From IMG/VR virus record IMGVR_UViG_3300030085_002431, positions 1-64,000 of that record: a stretch of 64,000 nt of DNA; one strand, given 5' to 3'. The notes under the pieces were generated by a model that was given only the letters and a program-made list of their open reading frames with translations, ran no database searches and was not told where the DNA came from. The first letter of the stretch is position 1. The number at the start of each line of letters is the position of its first letter. Shown in pieces: positions 2-10,509 of this stretch. Both the position numbers and the translations under genes were made by a program.

Positions 2-169
2 AACCTAATTGAGGCACATATGCGTCCAAATCCTGATTTTAGGCATGGAAATGTCGTTGCAATCCCAAATTGGGGTGATATTAGTCAGTATAGAGAGTGT
101 GAACTCAAGAAAGGGTACAATTATGTCGATGATCCTGACTATAAACGGAAGGGATTCTGGATAGATTAA
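2..169 (+). CDS. 3' end of a hypothetical phage protein (truncated by window edge)
   Basis: Frame 2 is open from position 2 (NLIEAHMRPNPDFRHGNVVAIPNW...GFWID) to TAA at 167-169; not in the ORF track. Confidence 0.6.
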   Translation, partial: NLIEAHMRPNPDFRHGNVVAIPNWGDISQYRECELKKGYNYVDDPDYKRKGFWID

Positions 170-172
170 ATA
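165..172 (+). promoter_or_regulatory. possible T4-type late promoter variant (ATTAAATA)
   Basis: Resembles the TATAAATA late box, overlaps the upstream stop codon and lies 4 nt before the structured leader at 177. Confidence 0.45.
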
Positions 173-176
173 ATAC

Positions 177-224
177 GGAGATAGAACCTCCCAAAAAGTT
201 CTGTTTAACCGATTGGAGAAACAG
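177..224 (+). promoter_or_regulatory. candidate structured 5' leader: H-type pseudoknot plus RBS-sequestering hairpin
   Basis: GGAG 177-180 pairs with CTCC 188-191; AGAAC 183-187 pairs with GTTCT 198-202; CTGTTT 201-206 pairs with AAACAG 219-224, enclosing GGAG 215-218. Confidence 0.5.
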
Positions 225-392
225 ATGGCTAAGTATCACGTAGACAGAGACCCTGAATACATGTATAAAATGTGGGGAACAACCTCTTTGATTACTGATT
301 ACTGGTGCAAACCTCACCCCACAACTGATAATGCAGAGGAATTTTCCGAAGCAGAAATTGATGCAATGGGGGATGAAAAAGAAAAGGGTTAA
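225..392 (+). CDS. small hypothetical protein (55 aa, MAKYHVDRDPEYMYKMWGTT...)
   Basis: ATG 225 with GGAG 7 nt upstream, stop TAA 390-392; fills the gap before gp25; below the ORF-track cutoff. Confidence 0.7.
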   Translation: MAKYHVDRDPEYMYKMWGTTSLITDYWCKPHPTTDNAEEFSEAEIDAMGDEKEKG

Positions 393-432
393 AAAACTAT
401 TATAGATAGTATATAATACTCTTGTTTTATAA

Positions 433-834
433 ATGGCAACACGGGTCTCTAGGGAATTTAGGGATATTAGTTTATCTTTTACTAAACACCCAGTAACAAA
501 TGATATTGTGGCACTTAAAAACGAAGATGCCATTAAGAGATCCGTTGTTAACTTAATACGGACACAACTTGGTGAAAGATTTTTTGAACCTATAATTGGA
601 ACTTCCTTAGAAGGTTCATTATTTGAACTATCTCATCCTGAAATTCGTATTTCATTAGAAGGTGAGATAAAAGTTTTACTTGAGAACTATGAACCACGTA
701 TTTCTACAAATAGTGTTCGAGTAGATCCATCACCAGATGACTATGAATTGAATGTAACTTTAACTTATGACATTGTTGGTCTGGCAATACCTAGACAAAA
801 CATCGAGTTTATTTTACAACCAGCTAGGATATAA
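433..834 (+). CDS. gp25: baseplate wedge protein, T4 gp25-like
   Basis: Motifs DISLSF..HPVTND, AIKRSVVNLIRT.LGERFF.P, LLENYEPRI; located directly before gp6. Confidence 0.93.
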   Translation: MATRVSREFRDISLSFTKHPVTNDIVALKNEDAIKRSVVNLIRTQLGERFFEPIIGTSLEGSLFELSHPEIRISLEGEIKVLLENYEPRISTNSVRVDPSPDDYELNVTLTYDIVGLAIPRQNIEFILQPARI

Positions 835-2723
835 TGTCGTTCAATCAATTCACAAACTTAGACTTTGACGATCTAAAGTCGCAAATTAAAGACTACCTTA
901 GGACAAACAGTAATTTTACTGATTTTGACTTTGAGGGGTCTAATTTTTCAGTATTGATTGATATTTTAGCATATAACTCTTATATTACTGCCTTCAACAC
1001 GAACATGGCAGTAAATGAGTCCTTTTTGGACAGTGCTACATTAAGAGAGAATGTGGTATCACTTGCTAGAAATATTGGATATGTTCCACGTTCAAAGAGA
1101 GCATCAAAGGCAAGAGTTAGTTTTACCGTTGACACTGCTGGATTCTTAGATGTTAGGTCAGTAACTCTAAAAGCAGGTGTAGTTGCACTTGGTGCAATGG
1201 TTTCTGGCAGTTATGTATTTTCAATTCCAGAAGATATCACGGTCCCTGTTGATGCTAATGGAATTGGAACGTTTGAAAATATTGATATTCTTGAGGGAAC
1301 ATACCTCACTAAAAACTTCACCATGGATGACTCTCAACCAACTCAGAGATTTATCATTCCAAACGATAATGTAGATTCCACAACAATTCGTACATTTGTT
1401 AGTGACTTGAGAAACGAAGAGTATACATTATACTCAAATATTTTAAACCTAGACGAAACATCAAAAATTTTCCTCATCCAAGAGGTTGAAGATGAGCAAT
1501 ATGAACTTGTTTTTGGTGATAATGTCTTTGGTAAAAAACCAACTACAGGAAGTTCTATATTTGTAAGTTATATTATAACTAATGGTAAAGATGGCAATGG
1601 TGTTGCCAACTTTACTTTCTCTGGAATCATAGAAGATAATAATCAGAATAGAATTACTACTGGTATTTCTAGAGTTTCAACAATTCAGTCATCTGAAAAT
1701 GGTGATGATATTGAAAAAATTGATAGTATTAAGTACCTTGCACCTAGGGTTTATTCCTCCCAGTACAGGGCAGTAACAGCAAATGACTATAAGGGTCTAA
1801 TACCCACGATTTTCCCCAATGTAGAGGCAGTGAGTGCCTATGGAGGAGATGAATTAGACCCACCAGAATATGGAAAAGTATTCATTTCAATCAAACCTAG
1901 ACAAGGTAAGTTCTTATCTAGAGTTACAAAAGAACAAATCAAAAAAGACTTGAAACAATATACAATCGCAGGAATTAAACCAGAGATTGTTGACTTGAAA
2001 TACTTGTTTGTTGAACTTAATACTAGTGTTTATTACAACAGAAGTTCTATAGCAGATGTTACTGCACTTAGGAATCAAGTAATTTCTACTTTAGATTCTT
2101 ATGGAAAGTCATTTGACCTTAATAACTTTGGTGGAAGATTTAAGTATAGTAAAGTAGTTGCATTGATTGATGATATTAATCCAGCAATTACATCAAACAT
2201 CACCACATTAAAAATTAGACGTGATTTAGCACCAGCTTTTAATTCTGCTGCTACTTATGAAATTTGTTTTGGTAATGCATTCCATGTTAAGAAGAAAAAT
2301 GATGCAGATAACCGTGGATATAACATAAAATCGACTGGATTTAGAATTAATGGAGTCGATGGAATAGTTTACATGAGTGATGTTCCAATCGATTCGGAAA
2401 AAGGTTCTATTTTCTTCTTTACTCTAGTCGATAATGTTCCATTTATTATTAAAAACAATGCAGGTGTTGTATATTACAGAAAAGGTGAAATCTTATTAGA
2501 TACCGTTACTATCATATCTACACAAAGTCCTAATGGAATTGAAATTGAGGCAATACCTGACTCAAATGATGTCATTGCGTTGAAAGATATATACTTAGAC
2601 CTAAGTATGGAGAAACTAGTCGTCAACATGGTTGAGGATAAGATTTCTTCTGGAGAAAATACTTCCGCAACAGAGTACATTGTAACTTCAAGCTACGCAA
2701 ACGGAACAGTATATACAAGATAA
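834..2723 (+). CDS. gp6: baseplate wedge subunit, T4 gp6-like
   Basis: N-terminal LDFDDLKSQIKDYLR..NFTDFDFEGSNFSVLIDILAYN, ESFLDSATLRENVVSLARNIGYVPRS, QYRAVTANDY. Confidence 0.95.
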   Translation: MSFNQFTNLDFDDLKSQIKDYLRTNSNFTDFDFEGSNFSVLIDILAYNSYITAFNTNMAVNESFLDSATLRENVVSLARNIGYVPRSKRASKARVSFTVDTAGFLDVRSVTLKAGVVALGAMVSGSYVFSIPEDITVPVDANGIGTFENIDILEGTYLTKNFTMDDSQPTQRFIIPNDNVDSTTIRTFVSDLRNEEYTLYSNILNLDETSKIFLIQEVEDEQYELVFGDNVFGKKPTTGSSIFVSYIITNGKDGNGVANFTFSGIIEDNNQNRITTGISRVSTIQSSENGDDIEKIDSIKYLAPRVYSSQYRAVTANDYKGLIPTIFPNVEAVSAYGGDELDPPEYGKVFISIKPRQGKFLSRVTKEQIKKDLKQYTIAGIKPEIVDLKYLFVELNTSVYYNRSSIADVTALRNQVISTLDSYGKSFDLNNFGGRFKYSKVVALIDDINPAITSNITTLKIRRDLAPAFNSAATYEICFGNAFHVKKKNDADNRGYNIKSTGFRINGVDGIVYMSDVPIDSEKGSIFFFTLVDNVPFIIKNNAGVVYYRKGEILLDTVTIISTQSPNGIEIEAIPDSNDVIALKDIYLDLSMEKLVVNMVEDKISSGENTSATEYIVTSSYANGTVYTR

Positions 2724-2724
2724 A

Positions 2725-5700
2725 ATGTCAGATACTAGAGTAACGATTCAAAATATTATTCAGACTCAAATTCCTGAGTTTCTGAATGAAGAATCCCCAC
2801 TGTTTAAAGAGTTCTTAGATGCATACTATGTATCTCAAGAACATAAAACTGGTACAGTAGAACTTGCTAGTGATTTAAGTTCTTTAAAGGACCTTAAAAA
2901 ATACAATAATGAGTTATTTGCATCAGCTTTTGTACCAACACTTCTTGTAGCAGATGTAACTGCGTTTGACACTGATATAGCAGTTAGTCATACTATTGGT
3001 TTTCCTGATAGGGATGGTCTCATCAAAATTGATAATGAAATCATCTATTATAAGAATAAATCATCGCAAGGATTTAGTGGTTGCTCTAGAGCATTTAGTG
3101 CTATCACCTCAATTTTAGAAAATACTACTTCAAATTATACCGAGACTGAGATTGCTCCACACTCTGCAGGAGCTCGAGTTGCTAATCTTTCTTTAGTTTT
3201 TTACGGTGAGTTATTTAAAAAATTCAAATCACAATTTTTACCTGGATTTGAAGAAAGACAATTTATCCCACAGGTTGAAATAACAAATGTTCTGTCTAGA
3301 GCAGTTGATTTCTATACTTCAAAAGGAACAGATACATCTTTTAAACTTTTATTCAGAGCATTATATGGTGAACCAGTAGAAGTTATTAAACCTCAAGAAT
3401 ATCTTTTAAGACCATCAGACGATAGTTTCTTTGTAACAAAAAATATTCTTGTAGAAAAAATTTCTGGTTCAGATCCATTAAAGTTGAATGGGGAAACTGT
3501 CTTTCAAGAAACGGGTAATGTTGAGGAATCATCTGCAGCAATTTATCTTGTAGAGTATAGACCTGTTGATGGAAAAGACTTATATGAGATTTCTTTTGAT
3601 AGTTCTTCTTTCCTGTATAGTTTCAATACTACGAAGAAATCAAATGTTTCTAAGAAAGTAATATCTGGGTCTACAACAATTAATGTTGATTCTACAGTTG
3701 GATTTGCAAATAGTGGAACTTTAAAAGTTTCTAATGGTTCCGTATTATATGATGTAACTTATACTGAAAGAACAAATACACAATTTTTAGGTTGTTCTGG
3801 GATTGTAACTGATATTGAATTTGGAAGTGAGGTATTAGAATCAAATTTTGCTTATGCATATGATAAGGATGGGGAAAAAGTAGAGTTTCGTATAATTAAT
3901 GTTATTGGAAATATTGATTTTTCTAATACATCTAATTTATTGGAAGAGGATAAAATTACACTATCTTCTTTTGGTGCAGAATTATCTGAAAAATCTGAGT
4001 TTAATAGTTGGATTTACAATAATGTAACCAATCACCAAATCAAATCCATAGTCCTTGGAAATGACCCAAATGGTACTAGATATAGAATTGAATTTTTTGA
4101 TAATATTAATTTCTTTCTTGACCAGGAAGTCACCCTTAAGAATTTAAAAATAGCTTCAGATAGTGGATTATCTGCCACGGTAGAAAACTTGATTTCTGAT
4201 ACTATTATTGAAGTTCAATGCAATCAAAATTGTCTTGATAAAGATACTCTAACCACAGATTTGATGACTGGTAAGAGTGATCAAAATAAAACACCATCTG
4301 TTTCTGACATTCCAATTTCTATTCAGAATACCTATATTGATGATAAGTATGAAAACTTCTATGTCGCAGCATCTGGCCTTCCAAACTATCCCCTGTATGC
4401 AAAAGAACAAATCATCAATACTTCTACTCAAGTTAGTGTGGGTAATACTAATACCCTAGATACTGATGTTGTTCATAAGTTTTTCACAGGTGAGAAGATA
4501 TACTACAGCCCATCTACAAATTCTGGCATCGGCACTGGAATTTACTATGTCACTACAGTTGGTGATATCAAAGATAGTAAGAAAATAAAGTTATCTTTAA
4601 GTAAGAGTGATTTATTCTCAAAAAAATACATAACTTTTAAGAATATTTCTGGTGATTCTTTTGTAAAATTAGATTATGAGAATAAAGTAGTTGAGAATCA
4701 AAAACTCTTTAAGAAATTTAATTATATCAAAGGTGATTCTTCACTGAGGGAAGTTGCAGATAGAACAACTAACAATAGACAAATTGGATTACTTGCAAAT
4801 GGTATAGAACTTTATTCACCATCTCTTTTTGATGAAAATATTTACTATGGAAAGTTACAGTCAATTCTAGTAACTAATCCTGGAAAAAATTATGATGTAA
4901 TCAATCCACCAGAACTTGAAATTAAAGATGTCTCTGGTAGTGGTGCATCTGGTTATTTGAATATTAGTGGTGGACTAAGACAAGTTAAAATTATTACTCC
5001 AGGAATTGGATACCAAACAAAACCAAAAATTACTCTTATTGGTGGTAATGGTCGTGGTGCTGTTGTTGAACCAAACTTAGTTAAATCTCAAATTACTTCT
5101 GGTTTCCAGGGTGATGGAAATGGAGTTAATCCAACCACCGATATAATTACATTCATCAATAAGCATAACTTTGATAATGGTGAGCAAGTTTCATATATCA
5201 CTAATGGTAATTCAGAATTAAAACCATTTAAAGAAGATTCTGTATATTTTGTTGGAGTTGAAGATTCAAAATCAATTAAGTTGTATGATAAAGAGTCTGA
5301 TGCTCTTCAAAAAGTCAACCCAGTAAATATTGTTGGCATTAGTTCTGGATTCCATTCATTTAAAACTTTGGAATCCAAGAATACAATTACAAGACTGTAT
5401 GTAAATAGCACTGGTTCTGGATATTCAAATAAACTTATTAAGATTCCATCTCTGATTGCATATGATGGAACTAATAATGGTGTTAATACTTGGGATTACT
5501 ATATCTATGCAGCAGACCACCAATTTAATAATAGGGATATTGTAAGGTATCGTACTACTGGTTCGGAAATTGCTGGATTATCTACAACAAAAGAATATGT
5601 TGTAACTGTTCTTGATAACAATAAATTTAAATTATCCGATATAGGTGGTGAGGATGAAACATTCGATAAAAACTATCGACTAAAAAAATATATTGATTTA

Positions 5701-8700
5701 TCTAGTGTTGGAGTTGGAACGCATACATTTGCATATCCACCAATTAGATTGAAAGTAGAAACATTATCTGGTATTGGTGCTACAACTGTTATTGAACCAG
5801 AATTTGAACCAATTGTTCTTGGTTCTATTGATAGTGTGTTTGTTGAATCTCCTGGAGTTGGATATGGAGTTTCTGATGTTATTAACTTCCACAGAAGACC
5901 TGATATTCAAATTAAAGATATAAAATCGGAGGCACTATTAAGACCAATTGTAGTAAATGGTGCTATTGTTGATGTACAGTTTTTAACATTTGGTTCTGGA
6001 TACGAAAAAGGTATTGATTTAATAGTAACTGGAGAAGGAACCTTTGCTGACCTAAGACCTACTGTAGACGATAATGGAAGAATAGTTGCTGTAAACATAG
6101 CAAATGGTGGTATTGGATATAAACCAGAATCTACTGAAATTACCGTATCTAGAAGAGGAGTAGATGCAAAATTCTTAGGTGATGTATATGAATGGAAAAT
6201 TAATCAGGCAGAAAAGCATAAGGAACTTTTATCTGACAATAGGGATGAGGCAATTATTGTTCCAAGTAAAGTAAAGGAATTTGGTTTACATCCAGTAAAT
6301 TTCTATACTCCAAAACTTCTTAGAAGAACATTAAAAGACCATATTGATGATGCGAATAGAGAAGTAGCAGATAATAGTCACTCACCAATCGTTGGATGGG
6401 CATATGATGGAAATCCAATTTATGGTCCTTATGGTTTAGTTGGATCATCAATTCAGAAAATTAGGTCTAGTTATGGAAAACAAGCAGAACCAAATTCTGC
6501 ATTAAGACCATCTACATTCCCAGAAGGATTTTTCCTAAATGATTTTTACTTTGACCGAGCAATCGGTGATTTGGATGAATTTAATGGAAGATTCTGCGTA
6601 ACTCCAGAATATCCTGATGGCATTTATGCTTACTTTACAACAATTGATAATAGTGCAATTTCTAAACCAGAGTATCCATATGTTGTTGGTCAATTTTTCA
6701 GAGATTTTGTAATTCCTAGAAACTATGAACCTAATTTTAATCAAACTATTGACATTAGTAGATTAAATTTAATTAGAAATACTTCACCATATTACTTAAA
6801 TTCAAATACATCAACATATGATTTGATATTAAAGTCTGATGAAAAATATAAGCAAGAGTTCACTGTATCTAAAACTTTAAAGTCAGGAATTGACAATATT
6901 GGAGTATATGCTTCTGGAGAAGGTTATAAAGTTGGTGATAATGTTGTATTTAATAATGTAGGAACTGATGGTACAGGTGTTTCTGCAGCCGTTTCTAGAA
7001 TCAAAGGCAAGAGTATTAATACAATTAAAGTTGGTGTAACTACTCAAACTGATGTTCAACTGTTTTCTAAGGGAAATAATATAATTGGTATTACAAGAGA
7101 ACCTCATGGATATGTTACAGGTGAAGTTATTAATGTAAGTTCGATTTCAGATGCAAAATACTCCGAGTTAGAGGGTTCTAGAGAAATATTTGTACAACAA
7201 AAAACTTCTAATCTCATTGAAGACATTGATGTTGTATCTGCAACAGGTTTAACAACAGCAATCACAGTTGGGGATACATTTGGATTTAAAGTAAGTGATT
7301 ATATTCAAATTGGAGACACAGAGAGGGCACAAATTGTAAGGATTGATGAAACAAATTCTCAGTTTATTGTAAATAGACTCACAAATACTGGTATCCATAC
7401 TGTGGGTATATCCAGCATTAAGCTCTTGCCTACAGAGTTTAGATATGGAGTTGACAAAATATCATCTCAGATAACAGTCAATGAGCAGTATTATTTTGAT
7501 TCAAAGACACTTATTGGATTTGGAACAAATATTAATAATTACACCCTTTCAGATAATAGTAATTTATCTGTTCCTGCTGGTGGTATTTACATTCCAAATC
7601 ATAATATAAGGACAGGTCAAAAATTGAAGTACCACACTGGTTTTGGTGGAACTTCAATTTATGTTGGTCAAACTGTAAGTTCTACTTTGCCTTTAGCAGA
7701 TGGATCGGATGTTTATGCAGTAAATCTTGGTGTTAATTTTATTGGTCTATCTACTTCACCATCAGTAGTAACTCCTCTAGTTATTGTAGACCAAGCAACA
7801 GTAACTGGGTCTGCACATTCATTGTCAGTCAATTTTTCTGATGTTACTGCAGTAGTAGAGCAGTTTGGTCTTGATGTTGTTACAAATAAACCACATAATT
7901 TAAAAAATACAGAGAAAGTTAAATTCAACTTATTACCAAGATTGACAGATAACTTTGTGATTAGATATGACACAAAACTTAGAAAATTAACTTCTGAAAA
8001 AATTAGTTTTGATGCATCTCAAGTAGGTGTAAATGTTTCAACAAATGAAATTCACTTACCAGATAATACTTTAAACACTGGTGATAAAGTTGTTTATTAT
8101 GTTGGTTCTGGTACTACTATTGGTGGTTTAATTGATAATGAAACATATTTTGTAATCAAAGAAAAACCTGATTTTATTAGACTTTCCGAATTCTTAGTAA
8201 ATGCAAATGAAGGTGTTGGAATTGCCATAACTTCACAAGGAAGTGGAACTCAACATATTGCAAGAATCAATCCACCATTAACAGGAACACAGCAAAATAT
8301 TGTTAAGTTTGACTTATCTGATCCTAGTCTGACTGGAATGGATATGAGAGTATTTAAGGACAGCAGTCTTTCAATTGAGCTTGAATCTTACAGATATAGA
8401 AGAAATTCTATTGAAGCAGGTCTTCCTGATGCAGAACTACAGATAGATACTTCCGAAGAATTTATTGGAAATACACTATTCTATAACATTATACCACTCG
8501 CACCAAATGTTGTTGAGAAAAAACAATCATCAGTTGACACTGAAGTTGTTGGTAATAATAAGATAATCCTTAAACCAAGTATTTTTAATCAACAGTATTC
8601 TATTGTTTCTATTGGAACGACAACATTTAAGTTTAATTTAAAGTCCAAACCAGAATACTTTGACTACAGTGTTAATAGTGGAGTTAGTACAATTTTCTAT

Positions 8701-10509
8701 GATACTGACTCTACCACTACAGATGGTCCAATCTCCGAAGTTAAGATTAACTTTGATGGAAGAGGATATAGCAAACTTCCAAAAATTGAACGAATTGATA
8801 GTGAATATGGTACAGATGCTGTTCTTAAAGCATCATCAGAAACAATCGGTAAAATTGATTCTATTGATAGAGTTAAGGATGGTTTTGACTATCCAACTGA
8901 TCCAACTTTAAGACCTGTTCTTAGTGTTCCTTCAGTATGCCAGATAAAAGACATAGCAAGAGTTGATAGTATTGGCATTACTACTGGAGGTAAAGGATAC
9001 CATGTTGCACCAACACTAAAAGTCATTGGAAATGATGATATTGAACTTCTAGCTTTTATTCAAGGTGGTTCTGTTGTAGATGTTTCTGTAGTTGAAAATA
9101 CTCAAAATCTCAATGGACCTTTAAAGATAGTTGCTACAAGAAACTCTAATGGATATGATATTGATGACATCGTATATAATTCTGGCACAAATGAAGTTAC
9201 CTTAGAACTTGTAAATGCAGATAGTCAAATATATCCATTAAGTGGAGAGTTTCCATTCAAGGTTGGTGATAGTATTTTTGTTGAGAATACAAGAATTTCT
9301 GATGCTGATACAAAGAATGGTTACAATTCTGAGGATTATAACTATAGATTCTTTACTGTAACTGGAATTAATGAAACTAATTTTACAGTTACATACAGCA
9401 TGGATGGATTTGGAACAAATCTTGGCGAGTATAATACTGATATCAACTATGGTTACGTAATCAACAAAAATGATATTGCAACATTCAAAATGAATATTGC
9501 AGATGACCTTGGTTATTTTTCTAATGAGAACGTTATTGGATATAACTCACTTAACCAGCAAGTGTTTAGTGCTAAGGTTATGGAGAGTGGTTGGAATAAT
9601 GATGTAAACCAATTAAGACTTATTGATAGTGAAGGTGAATTGAGTGTTGGTGATAAGTTACTTGGAACAAGGTCAAGACTTTTTGGTACTATCGAAAATG
9701 TATCTCAATTTAATCTAATTTCATCTCTCCACACTACAAGAGAGAAAATTAATTACCTTAATGACAATGCAGGTTATCTAAATGACTATCAGCAAAGAAT
9801 TGCCGATAATAATTATTATCAAAAATTCTCGTACTCTCTAAAATCAAAACTTTCATATGATAATTGGAAAGAATCTGTAAGGTCTCTTGTTCATCCAGCA
9901 GGATTTAAGGAGTTCTCGGATTTAGATATCATTTCTAATACAGTATCCACCAATCAAAATATGAAGGTTGGTGTTGGTGATTCCTCTTTAAATATTTTAA
10001 TTAATGTAGATAATGTCAGTTCAATGTATGGAAGATTCAACTTCTCTATGGTAACTGAAGATGAACTTCTTCCAAATGGTACTATTGAAAGAATCTTCTT
10101 CCCAGATGGTGTTAATTTAAGACCATATATTCTTAATAAAACTAATAAAGTTCTTAAGATTGACGATATTAGTAGTAATTTCACAGGATTTACTACAACC
10201 ACAGGAGGACAAATTGTTGGTCTAACTACATTCTCTCTTAAAAACAAGGGATTCCCACTATTCTATAGAGAGTTTGACAGTACAGTAGAGAAAAATTTTA
10301 CATTATCTGATGATAGGTTTACTTTTGAGAACCATAACTTCCAGTCTGGACAGCAACTTGAATACAAGATTAGGGAATCTATTAAACCAGCATCTGGAGC
10401 AGCAACCACAGTAGTTGAAAATAATTTTTCATATCCTACAGTTTCTACTACACTTGATAGTCCAATTGATGGTTTTGATTCTATTGCTAGAACCTTCGAT
10501 GCAAATTAA
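2725..10509 (+). CDS. gp7: large baseplate wedge initiator, gp7-like, with YHYH-like domain and repeated HxFxxGxxVxY beta-modules
   Basis: Follows gp6. N-terminal QTQIPEFLNEESPLFKEFLDAYY, FYTSKGTDTSFKLLFRALYG; internal HSPIVGWAYDGNPIYGPYG...DLDEFNGRFCVTPEYPDG; C-terminal YYQKFSYSLKS...VHPAGFKEF. Confidence 0.85.
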   Translation: MSDTRVTIQNIIQTQIPEFLNEESPLFKEFLDAYYVSQEHKTGTVELASDLSSLKDLKKYNNELFASAFVPTLLVADVTAFDTDIAVSHTIGFPDRDGLIKIDNEIIYYKNKSSQGFSGCSRAFSAITSILENTTSNYTETEIAPHSAGARVANLSLVFYGELFKKFKSQFLPGFEERQFIPQVEITNVLSRAVDFYTSKGTDTSFKLLFRALYGEPVEVIKPQEYLLRPSDDSFFVTKNILVEKISGSDPLKLNGETVFQETGNVEESSAAIYLVEYRPVDGKDLYEISFDSSSFLYSFNTTKKSNVSKKVISGSTTINVDSTVGFANSGTLKVSNGSVLYDVTYTERTNTQFLGCSGIVTDIEFGSEVLESNFAYAYDKDGEKVEFRIINVIGNIDFSNTSNLLEEDKITLSSFGAELSEKSEFNSWIYNNVTNHQIKSIVLGNDPNGTRYRIEFFDNINFFLDQEVTLKNLKIASDSGLSATVENLISDTIIEVQCNQNCLDKDTLTTDLMTGKSDQNKTPSVSDIPISIQNTYIDDKYENFYVAASGLPNYPLYAKEQIINTSTQVSVGNTNTLDTDVVHKFFTGEKIYYSPSTNSGIGTGIYYVTTVGDIKDSKKIKLSLSKSDLFSKKYITFKNISGDSFVKLDYENKVVENQKLFKKFNYIKGDSSLREVADRTTNNRQIGLLANGIELYSPSLFDENIYYGKLQSILVTNPGKNYDVINPPELEIKDVSGSGASGYLNISGGLRQVKIITPGIGYQTKPKITLIGGNGRGAVVEPNLVKSQITSGFQGDGNGVNPTTDIITFINKHNFDNGEQVSYITNGNSELKPFKEDSVYFVGVEDSKSIKLYDKESDALQKVNPVNIVGISSGFHSFKTLESKNTITRLYVNSTGSGYSNKLIKIPSLIAYDGTNNGVNTWDYYIYAADHQFNNRDIVRYRTTGSEIAGLSTTKEYVVTVLDNNKFKLSDIGGEDETFDKNYRLKKYIDLSSVGVGTHTFAYPPIRLKVETLSGIGATTVIEPEFEPIVLGSIDSVFVESPGVGYGVSDVINFHRRPDIQIKDIKSEALLRPIVVNGAIVDVQFLTFGSGYEKGIDLIVTGEGTFADLRPTVDDNGRIVAVNIANGGIGYKPESTEITVSRRGVDAKFLGDVYEWKINQAEKHKELLSDNRDEAIIVPSKVKEFGLHPVNFYTPKLLRRTLKDHIDDANREVADNSHSPIVGWAYDGNPIYGPYGLVGSSIQKIRSSYGKQAEPNSALRPSTFPEGFFLNDFYFDRAIGDLDEFNGRFCVTPEYPDGIYAYFTTIDNSAISKPEYPYVVGQFFRDFVIPRNYEPNFNQTIDISRLNLIRNTSPYYLNSNTSTYDLILKSDEKYKQEFTVSKTLKSGIDNIGVYASGEGYKVGDNVVFNNVGTDGTGVSAAVSRIKGKSINTIKVGVTTQTDVQLFSKGNNIIGITREPHGYVTGEVINVSSISDAKYSELEGSREIFVQQKTSNLIEDIDVVSATGLTTAITVGDTFGFKVSDYIQIGDTERAQIVRIDETNSQFIVNRLTNTGIHTVGISSIKLLPTEFRYGVDKISSQITVNEQYYFDSKTLIGFGTNINNYTLSDNSNLSVPAGGIYIPNHNIRTGQKLKYHTGFGGTSIYVGQTVSSTLPLADGSDVYAVNLGVNFIGLSTSPSVVTPLVIVDQATVTGSAHSLSVNFSDVTAVVEQFGLDVVTNKPHNLKNTEKVKFNLLPRLTDNFVIRYDTKLRKLTSEKISFDASQVGVNVSTNEIHLPDNTLNTGDKVVYYVGSGTTIGGLIDNETYFVIKEKPDFIRLSEFLVNANEGVGIAITSQGSGTQHIARINPPLTGTQQNIVKFDLSDPSLTGMDMRVFKDSSLSIELESYRYRRNSIEAGLPDAELQIDTSEEFIGNTLFYNIIPLAPNVVEKKQSSVDTEVVGNNKIILKPSIFNQQYSIVSIGTTTFKFNLKSKPEYFDYSVNSGVSTIFYDTDSTTTDGPISEVKINFDGRGYSKLPKIERIDSEYGTDAVLKASSETIGKIDSIDRVKDGFDYPTDPTLRPVLSVPSVCQIKDIARVDSIGITTGGKGYHVAPTLKVIGNDDIELLAFIQGGSVVDVSVVENTQNLNGPLKIVATRNSNGYDIDDIVYNSGTNEVTLELVNADSQIYPLSGEFPFKVGDSIFVENTRISDADTKNGYNSEDYNYRFFTVTGINETNFTVTYSMDGFGTNLGEYNTDINYGYVINKNDIATFKMNIADDLGYFSNENVIGYNSLNQQVFSAKVMESGWNNDVNQLRLIDSEGELSVGDKLLGTRSRLFGTIENVSQFNLISSLHTTREKINYLNDNAGYLNDYQQRIADNNYYQKFSYSLKSKLSYDNWKESVRSLVHPAGFKEFSDLDIISNTVSTNQNMKVGVGDSSLNILINVDNVSSMYGRFNFSMVTEDELLPNGTIERIFFPDGVNLRPYILNKTNKVLKIDDISSNFTGFTTTTGGQIVGLTTFSLKNKGFPLFYREFDSTVEKNFTLSDDRFTFENHNFQSGQQLEYKIRESIKPASGAATTVVENNFSYPTVSTTLDSPIDGFDSIARTFDAN

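What the first reader, a model, noticed from the sequence alone, without database searches (positions are those of the whole stretch)
177..224. Compact H-type pseudoknot leader competing with an RBS-sequestering hairpin
Seen: stem 1 GGAG(177-180)/CTCC(188-191), 2-nt loop, stem 2 AGAAC(183-187)/GTTCT(198-202), no loop 2, A-rich loop 3 CAAAAA. This is textbook H-type geometry. A hairpin CTGTTT(201-206)/AAACAG(219-224) encloses the GGAG RBS of the 55-aa gene and shares nt 201-202 with stem 2. A late-promoter-like box ends at 172, so the transcript would start at the pseudoknot. Established: T4 gene 32 is autoregulated through a 5' pseudoknot, and preQ1-I and SAM-II riboswitches are small H-type pseudoknots. 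Inference: a two-state translational switch at the head of the baseplate operon; ligand unknown.
Basis: partly seen in the sequence, partly recalled or inferred. Interest (0 to 1): 0.65.

Follow-up and report, generated by a model that had tools for sequence, protein, structure and literature searches.

The report
Conserved pseudoknot leader of cyanophage baseplate genes
The short stretch in front of a 55-codon phage gene is one copy of a very conserved, apparently undescribed RNA leader found in hundreds of T4-like aquatic phages, and it most likely folds in two competing ways to control how well ribosomes can start on that gene.

Summary
In one sequence they are not beyond chance: there are 27 such compact 4+5-bp patterns in the window against 17±5.5 in shuffles. 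Comparison with relatives makes the case.

The same roughly 28-nt core occurs once per genome, in front of a small ORF followed by gp25 and gp6. The core is a 4-bp stem, an AUAG(N)AAC loop, an A-rich spacer, then GUUC. I collected 195 distinct copies, from IMG/VR contigs, phage-like contigs binned into MAGs, and cultured Synechococcus phages including Syn9.

- **Stem 1:** proven by covariation, with four pair types at each of two positions.
- **Hairpin near the ribosome-binding site:** also covaries.
- **Stem 2:** its central letters G198, U199, U200 and C187 never vary, so classical covariation cannot test it. An indel compensation (AGAAAC or AGGAAC with GUUUCU) and wobble-compatible changes support it.
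- **Competition:** the 3' strand of stem 2 is also the strand that pairs with the ribosome-binding site. A minority clade instead pairs 8-10 nt of the core with the Shine-Dalgarno region.

This fits a pseudoknot-versus-sequestering-helix translational switch. The effector is unknown. No Rfam family matches. The element is not a preQ1-I, SAM-II or gene 32 member.

The parts
165..172 (+). Late-promoter-like box ATTAAATA (T4-type NATAAATA). It overlaps the stop codon of the upstream ORF (167-169).
   Evidence: TAAATA ends 3-8 nt (mode 6) before stem 1 in 104 of 173 related leaders. The function is inferred from the T4 late-promoter consensus. No transcription start data were obtained.
175..203 (+). 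Conserved leader core as matched by covariance model R1, which was built from other phages.
   Evidence: 35.3 bits, E 1.4e-7, and the only credible hit in the 250,613-bp genome. A pattern search of the genome finds one true copy.
177..180 (+). Stem 1, 5' strand (GGAG).
   Evidence: Pairs with 188-191. The inner three pairs are kept in 195 of 195 distinct copies and the outer pair in 184 of 195. There is covariation at two positions.
181..182 (+). Loop 1 (AU), which would cross the deep groove of stem 2.
   Evidence: AU in nearly all copies. It is lengthened to AUU or AUUU in most copies with a 6-bp stem 2.
183..187 (+). Stem 2, 5' strand (AGAAC), inside the stem 1 loop. It acts as a decoy partner for GUUCU.
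   Evidence: AAC is invariant and C187 was never replaced in the metagenome scan. The variable or absent nucleotide N sits between AG and AAC.
188..191 (+). Stem 1, 3' strand (CUCC), which resembles the anti-Shine-Dalgarno sequence.
   Evidence: In six relatives this strand plus its flanks pairs 8-10 nt with the Shine-Dalgarno region instead.
192..197 (+). Loop 3 (CAAAAA), an A-rich spacer.
   Evidence: It always ends in AAAA. Its length varies from 6 to 12 nt at the 5' side.
198..202 (+). Stem 2, 3' strand (GUUCU). It is also the 5' end of the helix that sequesters the ribosome-binding site.
   Evidence: G198, U199 and U200 are never replaced in IMG/VR copies with GGG/CCC-type stem 1. On average 3.7 of its 5 nt are predicted to pair with the -16..+3 window, and at least 2 do so in 93% of 195 leaders.
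201..224 (+). Hairpin 3: CUGUUU 201-206 with AAACAG 219-224, with a 12-nt loop holding the Shine-Dalgarno sequence. In the minimum-energy fold it extends to 197-200 with 225-230.
   Evidence: A perfect hairpin of at least 4 bp starts exactly at C201 in 151 of 195 leaders, with covarying arms. Internal G.U mismatches number 7 against 1 A.C.
215..218 (+). Shine-Dalgarno GGAG, 6 nt before the ATG.
   Evidence: Across relatives its modelled unpaired probability rises from 0.23 to 0.55 when the stem 2 strands are withheld.
225..392 (+). 55-codon ORF (phrog_1414, function unknown), the gene directly behind the leader.
   Evidence: Homologues lie behind the motif in nearly all copies. The products are acidic, with mean net charge -4.4.
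433..2723 (+). gp25 (433-834) and gp6 (834-2723) baseplate wedge genes, always downstream of the small ORF.
   Evidence: Pfam GPW_gp25 and Gp6 domains; phrog_261 and phrog_219. The same gene order appears in relatives.

Best explanation
This is a cis-acting RNA leader that sets how often ribosomes start on the small ORF, and probably on the baseplate wedge genes behind it, by switching between two exclusive folds. In fold A, stem 1 (177-180 with 188-191) and stem 2 (183-187 with 198-202) form a compact H-type pseudoknot with the A-rich loop 3 lying along stem 1. This ties up GUUCU and leaves the ribosome-binding site open. In fold B, GUUCU instead starts the downstream helix (197-206 with 219-230 in the window), which buries the Shine-Dalgarno region, the spacer and the start codon. 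In one clade the stem 1 3' strand pairs directly with the Shine-Dalgarno sequence instead. Shown here: stem 1 and hairpin 3 exist as RNA helices; the core is invariant while the platform varies; and the two folds share strands. Inferred: that stem 2 really forms, that the pseudoknot is the 'on' state, and what shifts the balance. That could be a protein, an ion or small molecule, or simply the order of folding during transcription. A plausible purpose is to hold down the output of proteins needed in few copies per virion when they are expressed from a strong late promoter.
For: Conservation: 78 of 80 homologues of the 55-aa gene with enough upstream DNA carry the core, although protein identity falls to 52%. 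65 of 80 gp25-anchored loci carry it. More than 120 IMG/VR contigs match the pattern. 117 cyanophage records (123 blastn matches in all) match, including Syn9, S-SKS1 and S-RSM4. The motif is single-copy in its own genome. Stem 1: pair 1 is AU, GC or CG, plus UA in L451. Pair 3 is GC, AU, UA or CG. The covariation score is 0.221 against 0.070 in shuffles (0 of 500 reach it) and at most 0.097 in slid controls. The inner three pairs hold in 195 of 195 copies without any pairing filter. Stem 2: complementarity is kept in every copy. All copies with GUUUC have N = A or G, giving six contiguous pairs (6 of 6 distinct copies in the tally, 7 seen in all), against 77 of 181 for GUUC (Fisher p 0.007). 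A183 to G keeps a G.U pair. Hairpin 3 starts exactly at C201 in 151 of 195 leaders with covarying arms: CUGUUU/AAACAG, CUGAUU/AAUCAG, CUAAUU/AAUUAG, CUCCU/AGGAG. The U202-to-C change is compensated inside hairpin 3. Competition: at least 2 nt of GUUCN pair with the ribosome-binding site in 93% of leaders. Shine-Dalgarno accessibility is 0.23 in the free ensemble, 0.55 with the stem 2 strands withheld, and 0.26 in the control (Wilcoxon p 2e-27). Six leaders have 8-10 nt of core-to-Shine-Dalgarno complementarity that changes together with the stem 1 type. Their minimum-energy folds (-19 to -22.6 kcal/mol) break stem 1, whereas folds with stem 1 enforced reach only -9 to -12. Strand: 7 G.U against 1 A.C mismatch in hairpin 3.
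Against: Stem 2 shows no Watson-Crick covariation. G198, U199, U200 and C187 are invariant, without even the wobble-neutral C-to-U change. The letters could therefore be kept for a reason other than pairing with each other. In the commonest variants (N = C, A or U) stem 2 needs a one-base bulge and would be weak by nearest-neighbour rules. The accessibility gain partly follows by construction, because withholding one arm of a hairpin opens it. Syn9 has the core but no obvious Shine-Dalgarno sequence or hairpin 3. In the CGGG/CCCG clade the upstream ORF reads into or through the motif, so translating ribosomes would unfold it. No probing, reporter or transcription start data exist. The Fisher test is not corrected for shared ancestry.
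Confidence: 0.52

Rival explanations
1. A static, always-folded 5' cap structure. Stem 1, a short stem 2 (AAC with GUU) and hairpin 3 stack into one rigid element at or near the 5' end of the late mRNA. It protects the message from 5'-end-dependent RNase E or RNase J attack and presents the ribosome-binding site. There is no switching.
For: TAAATA lies 3-8 nt upstream of stem 1 in 104 of 173 leaders, so the RNA would begin at the structure. Hairpin 3 begins exactly where a 3-4-bp stem 2 would end, which allows coaxial stacking. 5' stem-loops are established mRNA stabilisers (general knowledge).
Against: 38 of 40 CGGG/CCCG-type leaders have no adjacent promoter box and lie at or within the end of the upstream ORF, so the element is not 5'-terminal there. 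The six leaders with 8-10 nt of core-to-Shine-Dalgarno complementarity cannot hold both folds at once. A stabiliser would not need invariant loop and tail letters when both of its helices covary freely.
Confidence: 0.17
2. An operator for an RNA-binding protein. The stem 1 hairpin displays the invariant loop AUAG(N)AAC, and the tail AAAAGUUC is a second contact. A phage or host protein binds and represses or activates translation. Stem 2 need not form.
For: Strict invariance of unpaired-looking letters beside freely covarying stems is typical of protein or ligand contact sites. T4 uses such operators for genes 32, 43 and regA targets (PMC3014915). The motif occurs only in this one phage context.
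Against: The products of the gene behind the leader are acidic (mean net charge -4.4, 89% negative) and vary in their N-terminal module while the RNA does not. Autoregulation by them is therefore unlikely. No candidate protein was identified. The GUUUC/N compensation points to loop-tail pairing.
Confidence: 0.17
3. A DNA-level signal, such as a protein site or single-stranded-DNA hairpin, or a minus-strand terminator, rather than an RNA leader.
For: Covariation in stem 1 is equally compatible with a DNA hairpin. The terminator scan flags 191-177 on the minus strand.
Against: All neighbouring genes are on the + strand. The stem is only 4 bp. Wobble changes fit the + strand RNA: 7 G.U against 1 A.C in hairpin 3, and A183 to G opposite U202. 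The platform is tied to the Shine-Dalgarno sequence and ATG at a fixed 25-36 nt.
Confidence: 0.04
4. A chance pattern with no function.
For: About 17 such patterns per 64 kb are expected by chance.
Against: 195 distinct conserved copies in the same gene context, with leader letters more conserved than the protein that follows.
Confidence: 0.01

Closest known systems
preQ1-I riboswitch (Rfam RF00522)
   Same: About 30 nt. H-type pseudoknot topology. A short G/C-rich stem 1. An ...AAC run just before the stem 1 3' strand. An A-rich tail that could lie along stem 1. Stem 2 formed by loop and tail end. Translational control through the ribosome-binding site.
   Different: The covariance model finds nothing at 177-202. 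There is no loop 2. The C next to stem 1 has a built-in partner (G198) in every copy. The Shine-Dalgarno sequence lies 12-25 nt downstream rather than inside stem 2. The motif is never next to queuosine genes. The sequence resemblance is recalled from memory and was not tested beyond the model search.
T4/T2/RB69 gene 32 autoregulatory pseudoknot
   Same: A small coaxially stacked pseudoknot at the 5' end of a T4-type phage leader, upstream of the ribosome-binding site (PMC3014915).
   Different: That one precedes gene 32, is bound by gp32, and is followed by an unstructured A/U-rich tract. Here the gene is a small acidic ORF in front of gp25, and a covarying hairpin follows the pseudoknot.
T4 gene 25 and gene 38 'split' translation initiation regions
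   Same: An mRNA structure at the start region of the baseplate wedge gene cluster in T4-type phages that sets initiation efficiency (PMC3014915).
   Different: There the hairpin lies between the Shine-Dalgarno sequence and the AUG, shortens a 27- or 22-nt spacing, and enhances initiation. Here the spacing is a normal 6 nt, and the helix covers the Shine-Dalgarno sequence, spacer or AUG. The review says distant T4 relatives lack the T-even arrangement.
SAM-II / SAM-V riboswitches
   Same: Classic H-type pseudoknots with loop-helix triples, found in marine sequences, that control Shine-Dalgarno access.
   Different: No model hit. They are larger, the Shine-Dalgarno sequence lies inside the aptamer, and they sit with methionine/SAM genes.
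fourU-type RNA thermometers
   Same: A U-rich strand (here UUCU, then U-rich hairpin arms) pairs with AGGA of the Shine-Dalgarno sequence in an A-U-rich helix that could melt.
   Different: Thermometers have no invariant upstream pseudoknot core that competes for the anti-Shine-Dalgarno strand.

Membership tests
preQ1-I riboswitch (RF00522) | Match to the family covariance model at or above its gathering score | tested here: not met
   The Rfam E-value scan of 1-1200 gives no PreQ1 hit. Six relatives give none at the motif. RF00522 run on the whole genome gives 7 weak hits, none at 177-202.
preQ1-I riboswitch (RF00522) | H-type pseudoknot with an A-rich tail along stem 1 and stem 2 formed by loop and tail end | tested here: inconclusive
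   The topology can be drawn. Stem 1 is proven. Stem 2 is supported only by the indel compensation and wobble changes.
preQ1-I riboswitch (RF00522) | A free ligand-pairing C beside stem 1, and the Shine-Dalgarno sequence inside the stem 2 3' strand | tested here: not met
   C187 faces G198 in all copies. The Shine-Dalgarno sequence lies downstream, with GUUC to AUG spaced 25-36 nt.
preQ1-I riboswitch (RF00522) | Located upstream of queuosine synthesis or transport genes | tested here: not met
   The motif is always upstream of a small ORF, gp25 and gp6.
SAM-II / SAM-V riboswitches | Covariance model match and methionine/SAM gene context | tested here: not met
   No Rfam match. The context is baseplate genes.
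T4 gene 32 autoregulatory pseudoknot | Lies in the gene 32 leader and is followed by an unstructured A/U-rich tract that gp32 coats | tested here: not met
   The downstream gene is phrog_1414 followed by gp25. A covarying hairpin follows the core.
T4 gene 25 split initiation region | A hairpin between the Shine-Dalgarno sequence and the AUG that shortens an over-long spacing | tested here: not met
   The spacing is 6 nt in the window. The helix encloses the Shine-Dalgarno sequence or overlaps it.
Riboswitch-like translational switch (generic class) | An invariant sensor core joined to variable expression platforms | tested here: met
   The core is invariant. Three platform types occur: Shine-Dalgarno sequence in the 3' arm (118 leaders), in the loop (18 plus about 9 misparsed), and paired to the stem 1 3' strand (6).
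Riboswitch-like translational switch (generic class) | Mutually exclusive pairings between the core and the ribosome-binding site | tested here: met
   Shown in silico only.
Riboswitch-like translational switch (generic class) | A specific effector that shifts the fold | not testable with these tools
   No binding or probing data. No cellular gene contexts that would hint at a ligand.
The leader family defined here (small-ORF/gp25 leader of T4-like aquatic phages) | Match to model R1, built from 41 other phages, in front of a small ORF, gp25 and gp6 | tested here: met
   175-203, 35.3 bits, E 1.4e-7, the only credible hit in the genome. Gene order.

The most novel reading that the evidence does not exclude
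The invariant 28-nt core is a phage-specific aptamer. A small molecule or ion that reports the state of the infected cell stabilises the pseudoknot and licenses translation of the baseplate wedge genes. That would make it a riboswitch class confined to viruses and attached to structural genes.
Probability: 0.12. Interest if true: 0.88.

Novelty: new variant of a known kind. Interest (0 to 1): 0.62.

Why it matters
T4-like cyanophages are among the most abundant viruses in the sea, and little is known about how they regulate genes after transcription. This is a very small RNA element whose core letters never change across marine, estuarine and freshwater phages. It has three different ways of coupling to the ribosome-binding site. 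It offers a compact model for pseudoknot-based switching, a candidate explanation for how low-copy baseplate proteins are kept low when driven from strong late promoters, and a sharp sequence marker for this phage group. It is absent from Rfam 15, and the motif's sequence was not found in the text of the papers held.

Tried and rejected
- **RNAalifold on alignment A1** was uninformative. MAFFT put the 7-nt-loop and 8-nt-loop copies, and the two hairpin 3 types, out of register.
- **tblastn of the 55-aa protein against cultured phages** found nothing at E 1e-3. A DNA search with the leader worked instead.
- **S-SSM7, Syn33 and S-RIM2** lack the motif upstream of gp25.
- **Two scan patterns were mis-specified** by one extra C, so their zero results mean nothing.
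- **Scans for replaced G198, U199 or U200** returned only chance matches.
- **Metatranscriptome data:** only a few short contigs lie on the stretch, kept as contigs. One spans 122-272, across the presumed promoter. Nothing can be said about transcript starts, and DNA carry-over is not excluded.
- **The Syn9 transcriptome paper (Doron et al. 2016)** is not held. The supplement of the 2023 viral structured-RNA catalogue is not held either, so I cannot exclude that the motif is one of its unnamed candidates.
- **Programmed frameshifting** was considered, because in one clade the upstream ORF reads through the motif. I rejected it: most copies are non-coding and there is no slippery site at a suitable distance.
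- **A minus-strand terminator** was rejected: the stem is 4 bp and there are no minus-strand genes.
- **Autoregulation by the small protein** was rejected as unlikely.

Full report
**What is in the window.** The window is the first 64 kb of a 250,613-bp IMG/VR virus record. Its last 78 bases repeat bases 2-79. The genes around the finding are all on the + strand:
- the end of a phrog_3577 ORF (to 169);
- a 55-codon ORF (225-392, phrog_1414, function unknown);
- gp25 (433-834);
- gp6 (834-2723);
- a 2,594-codon ORF.

The closest cultured relative by gp25 is Synechococcus phage S-SSM7, at 62% identity. This is therefore a large T4-like cyanomyovirus relative.

**Checking the observation.** Taken alone it proves little:
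- The same kind of compact 4+5-bp H-type pattern occurs 27 times on this strand of the window and 16.8 +/- 5.5 times in shuffles.
- The nested fold of 173-240 is only 2 sd better than shuffles.
- TAAATA is not enriched in the window.
- No Rfam family matches, even with permissive thresholds.

**The comparative result.**
- **Loci found through the 55-aa protein.** I fetched 80 viral loci this way. Of the 76 with enough upstream DNA, all but two carry the same leader, even where the protein is only 52% identical. The layout is: a TAAATA box, 3-8 nt, a 4-bp stem, the loop AUAG(N)AAC, the other stem strand, a spacer ending in AAAA, GUUC, then a variable hairpin, the Shine-Dalgarno sequence and ATG.
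- **Loci found through gp25.** These do not depend on the motif or the small protein, and 65 of 80 show it. Most of the rest are truncated, and a few truly lack it.
- **Pattern scans.** A stricter pattern scanned over 185,579 species genomes gave ten hits, all phage-like contigs binned into MAGs or present in a Synechococcus lacustris assembly, each with small ORF, gp25 and gp6 behind.
- **Cultured phages.** A DNA search matched 123 phage records, 117 of them cyanophages, among them Syn9, Syn10, S-SKS1, S-SCSM1, S-RSM4, S-MbCM100, S-H35 and S-CREM1. S-SSM7, Syn33 and S-RIM2 lack it.
- **Copy number.** The motif is single-copy in its own genome.
- **Total.** I collected 195 distinct copies.

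**Stem 1.**
- On 41 distinct 30-nt cores, the outer pair is AU (29), GC (7) or CG (5).
- The third pair is GC (28), AU (10), UA (2) or CG (1).
- The covariation score is 0.221 against 0.070 in shuffles (0 of 500 reach it), and at most 0.097 when the partner is slid.
- That set had been chosen with four pairs. Without any pairing filter, the inner three pairs hold in 195 of 195 copies and the outer pair in 184 of 195.
- L451 adds a UA outer pair.
- The window's GGAG/CUCC differs from the commonest AGGG/CCCU by two double changes.

Stem 1 is established.

**Stem 2.**
- *Invariance.* Its central letters do not vary. Scans of all IMG/VR for copies with G198, U199 or U200 replaced gave only chance matches. 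A scan of the JGI metagenome collection for C187 replaced gave nothing, not even the wobble-neutral C-to-U change. Classical covariation therefore cannot be applied, and the invariance says these letters are constrained beyond simple pairing.
- *Support from N.* The nucleotide N between AG and AAC is free (C 73, A 56, G 21, U 21, absent 10). This is as expected for a bulge.
- *Support from an indel.* In the rare copies where the tail reads GUUUC, N is A or G in all of them (6 of 6 distinct copies in the tally; 7 were seen in the scan). That gives six contiguous pairs (AGAAAC or AGGAAC with GUUUCU). Among GUUC copies, N is A or G in only 77 of 181 (Fisher p 0.007, not corrected for ancestry).
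- *Support from a wobble change.* A183 to G keeps a G.U pair with U202.
- *Support from loop 3.* It varies in length from 6 to 12 nt but always ends in AAAA. That suits a strand running along stem 1.
- *Against.* With N bulged, the helix is weak on paper.

I rate the pseudoknot as likely, at about two in three, but not shown.

**Hairpin 3 and the coupling to the start site.**
- A perfect helix of at least 4 bp begins exactly at C201 in 151 of 195 leaders. Most of the others begin there with one mismatch.
- The arms covary: CUGUUU/AAACAG, CUGAUU/AAUCAG, CUAAUU/AAUUAG, CUCCU/AGGAG and others.
- Where U202 is C, the change is compensated in hairpin 3, not in stem 2.
- Internal mismatches are G.U seven times and A.C once, which fits RNA of the + strand.

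Three platform types recur across stem 1 types:
- the Shine-Dalgarno sequence overlapping the 3' arm (118 leaders);
- the Shine-Dalgarno sequence in the loop with the 3' arm abutting the ATG, as in the window (18, plus about 9 that my parser misread);
- in six leaders, an 8-10-nt pairing of AAC, the stem 1 3' strand and the start of loop 3 with the Shine-Dalgarno region. This pairing changes together with the stem 1 type.

In that last group the minimum-energy folds (-19 to -22.6 kcal/mol) break stem 1, while folds with stem 1 enforced reach only -9 to -12. Those leaders cannot hold both folds at once.

**Modelling the competition.** This covers the 195 leaders, using nested folds only.
- An average of 3.7 of the 5 nt of GUUCN pair with the -16..+3 window, and at least 2 do so in 93% of leaders.
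- The pairing probability with a downstream partner is 0.46, 0.77, 0.92, 0.96 and 0.95 for positions 198-202.
- The Shine-Dalgarno sequence is unpaired with probability 0.23 in the free ensemble and 0.26 with stem 1 enforced.
- It rises to 0.55 when the stem 2 strands are withheld, as they would be in the pseudoknot, and stays at 0.26 in a control that withholds loop 3.
- Part of this follows by construction, but it shows which strand does the sequestering.
- UUCU is complementary both to AGGA of the Shine-Dalgarno sequence and to the loop's AG(N)AA. All three partners are then tied to the fixed Shine-Dalgarno/anti-Shine-Dalgarno code. This is an inference, but it would explain why stem 2 cannot drift.

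**Where the RNA starts.**
- TAAATA ends 3-8 nt (mode 6) before stem 1 in 104 of 173 leaders with enough upstream DNA. In the window the gap is 4 nt.
- By the T4 rule (start about 6 nt after the box; my own knowledge of T4 late promoters), the transcript would begin at or just inside stem 1.
- In the CGGG/CCCG clade, 38 of 40 leaders have no such box. There the upstream ORF ends inside the motif (at the loop's UAG or at a UAA in loop 3) or reads right through it to the next start codon. The element is therefore not always 5'-terminal, which weakens a pure 5'-stabiliser role.
- I obtained no transcript start data. The public RNA runs hold only a few short contigs, one of which spans 122-272. The Syn9 transcriptome paper is not held.

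**Comparison with known systems.**
- The topology and size recall preQ1-I. However, the PreQ1 model finds nothing here, there is no loop 2, the C beside stem 1 always has G198 opposite, and the gene context is wrong.
- The T4 gene 32 pseudoknot is likewise a small pseudoknot at the 5' end of a T4-type phage leader, but it belongs to another gene and protein and is followed by unstructured RNA (PMC3014915).
- The T4 gene 25 and gene 38 'split' start regions use a hairpin between the Shine-Dalgarno sequence and the AUG to enhance initiation. The review states that distant T4 relatives lack this arrangement. Here the spacing is a normal 6 nt.
- The proteins behind the leader are acidic and vary in their N-terminal module, so autoregulation is unlikely.
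- The motif's sequence does not occur in the text of the papers held. A 2023 catalogue of more than 10,000 viral structured-RNA candidates does not describe it, and its supplement could not be read.

**Verdict.** The two-state reading is the best explanation, at about one in two. It has stated gaps: stem 2 is not proven, the direction of the switch is not shown, and the effector is unknown. It is not a member of any family tested. I class it as a new variant of a known kind: pseudoknot-based control of the ribosome-binding site.

Noticed in passing
window 397-420 (and about 20-30 nt before the gp25 ATG in L083-L162): A second conserved box, (A)TTATAGATA(T/G)(A/T)T, precedes gp25, which has no visible Shine-Dalgarno sequence. 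In a few relatives the same place holds a canonical AATAAATA box, so this may be a variant late promoter that gives gp25 its own short leader. In the window the box can also form an A-U-only hairpin (TATTATA 398-404 with TATAATA 412-418).
   Followed up: partly
window 213-227; L008-type loci: In leaders with the Shine-Dalgarno sequence in the loop, an in-frame TTG (in the window) or ATG (in relatives) overlaps the Shine-Dalgarno sequence (xTG-GAG-AAA-CAG-ATG). This would add four codons (MEKQ) to the small protein, and it misled my ORF parser.
   Followed up: no
L262, L265, L218 and other CGGG/CCCG-type loci: In this clade the upstream ORF reads into or through the whole leader. Its stop falls in the loop's TAG, in loop 3's TAA, or about 69 nt on, overlapping the next start. 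The core letters are nevertheless unchanged, so the same bases serve as both codons and RNA motif.
   Followed up: partly
L443 (Syn9, NC_008296.2 58,090-58,160): Syn9 has a perfect core behind CATAAATA, but between GUUCU and the gp98 ATG there is no clear Shine-Dalgarno sequence and no hairpin starting at C201. This is a possible fourth platform type, or a leader that has lost its coupling.
   Followed up: no
small ORFs behind the motif (L162, L265, L181, L219 and others): The small proteins are modular. An N-terminal PVDRD..YM..WGTT.LITDY module and a C-terminal ..IRNDEDYDDWEYGTEP module occur together or singly. The window's protein has only the first.
   Followed up: no
G000 1-79 and 250,536-250,613: The last 78 bases of the virus record repeat bases 2-79 of the window. 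The record is probably a circularly closed assembly, and the ORF ending at 169 begins at the far end of the record.
   Followed up: no
window 2725-10509: A 2,594-codon ORF directly follows gp6. It is presumably a giant baseplate or fibre protein of the kind seen in large cyanomyoviruses. I did not examine it.
   Followed up: no
window 191-177, minus strand: The terminator scan flags the reverse complement of stem 1 followed by the T-rich complement of the promoter box. I take this as a by-product of the motif, since there are no minus-strand genes nearby.
   Followed up: yes
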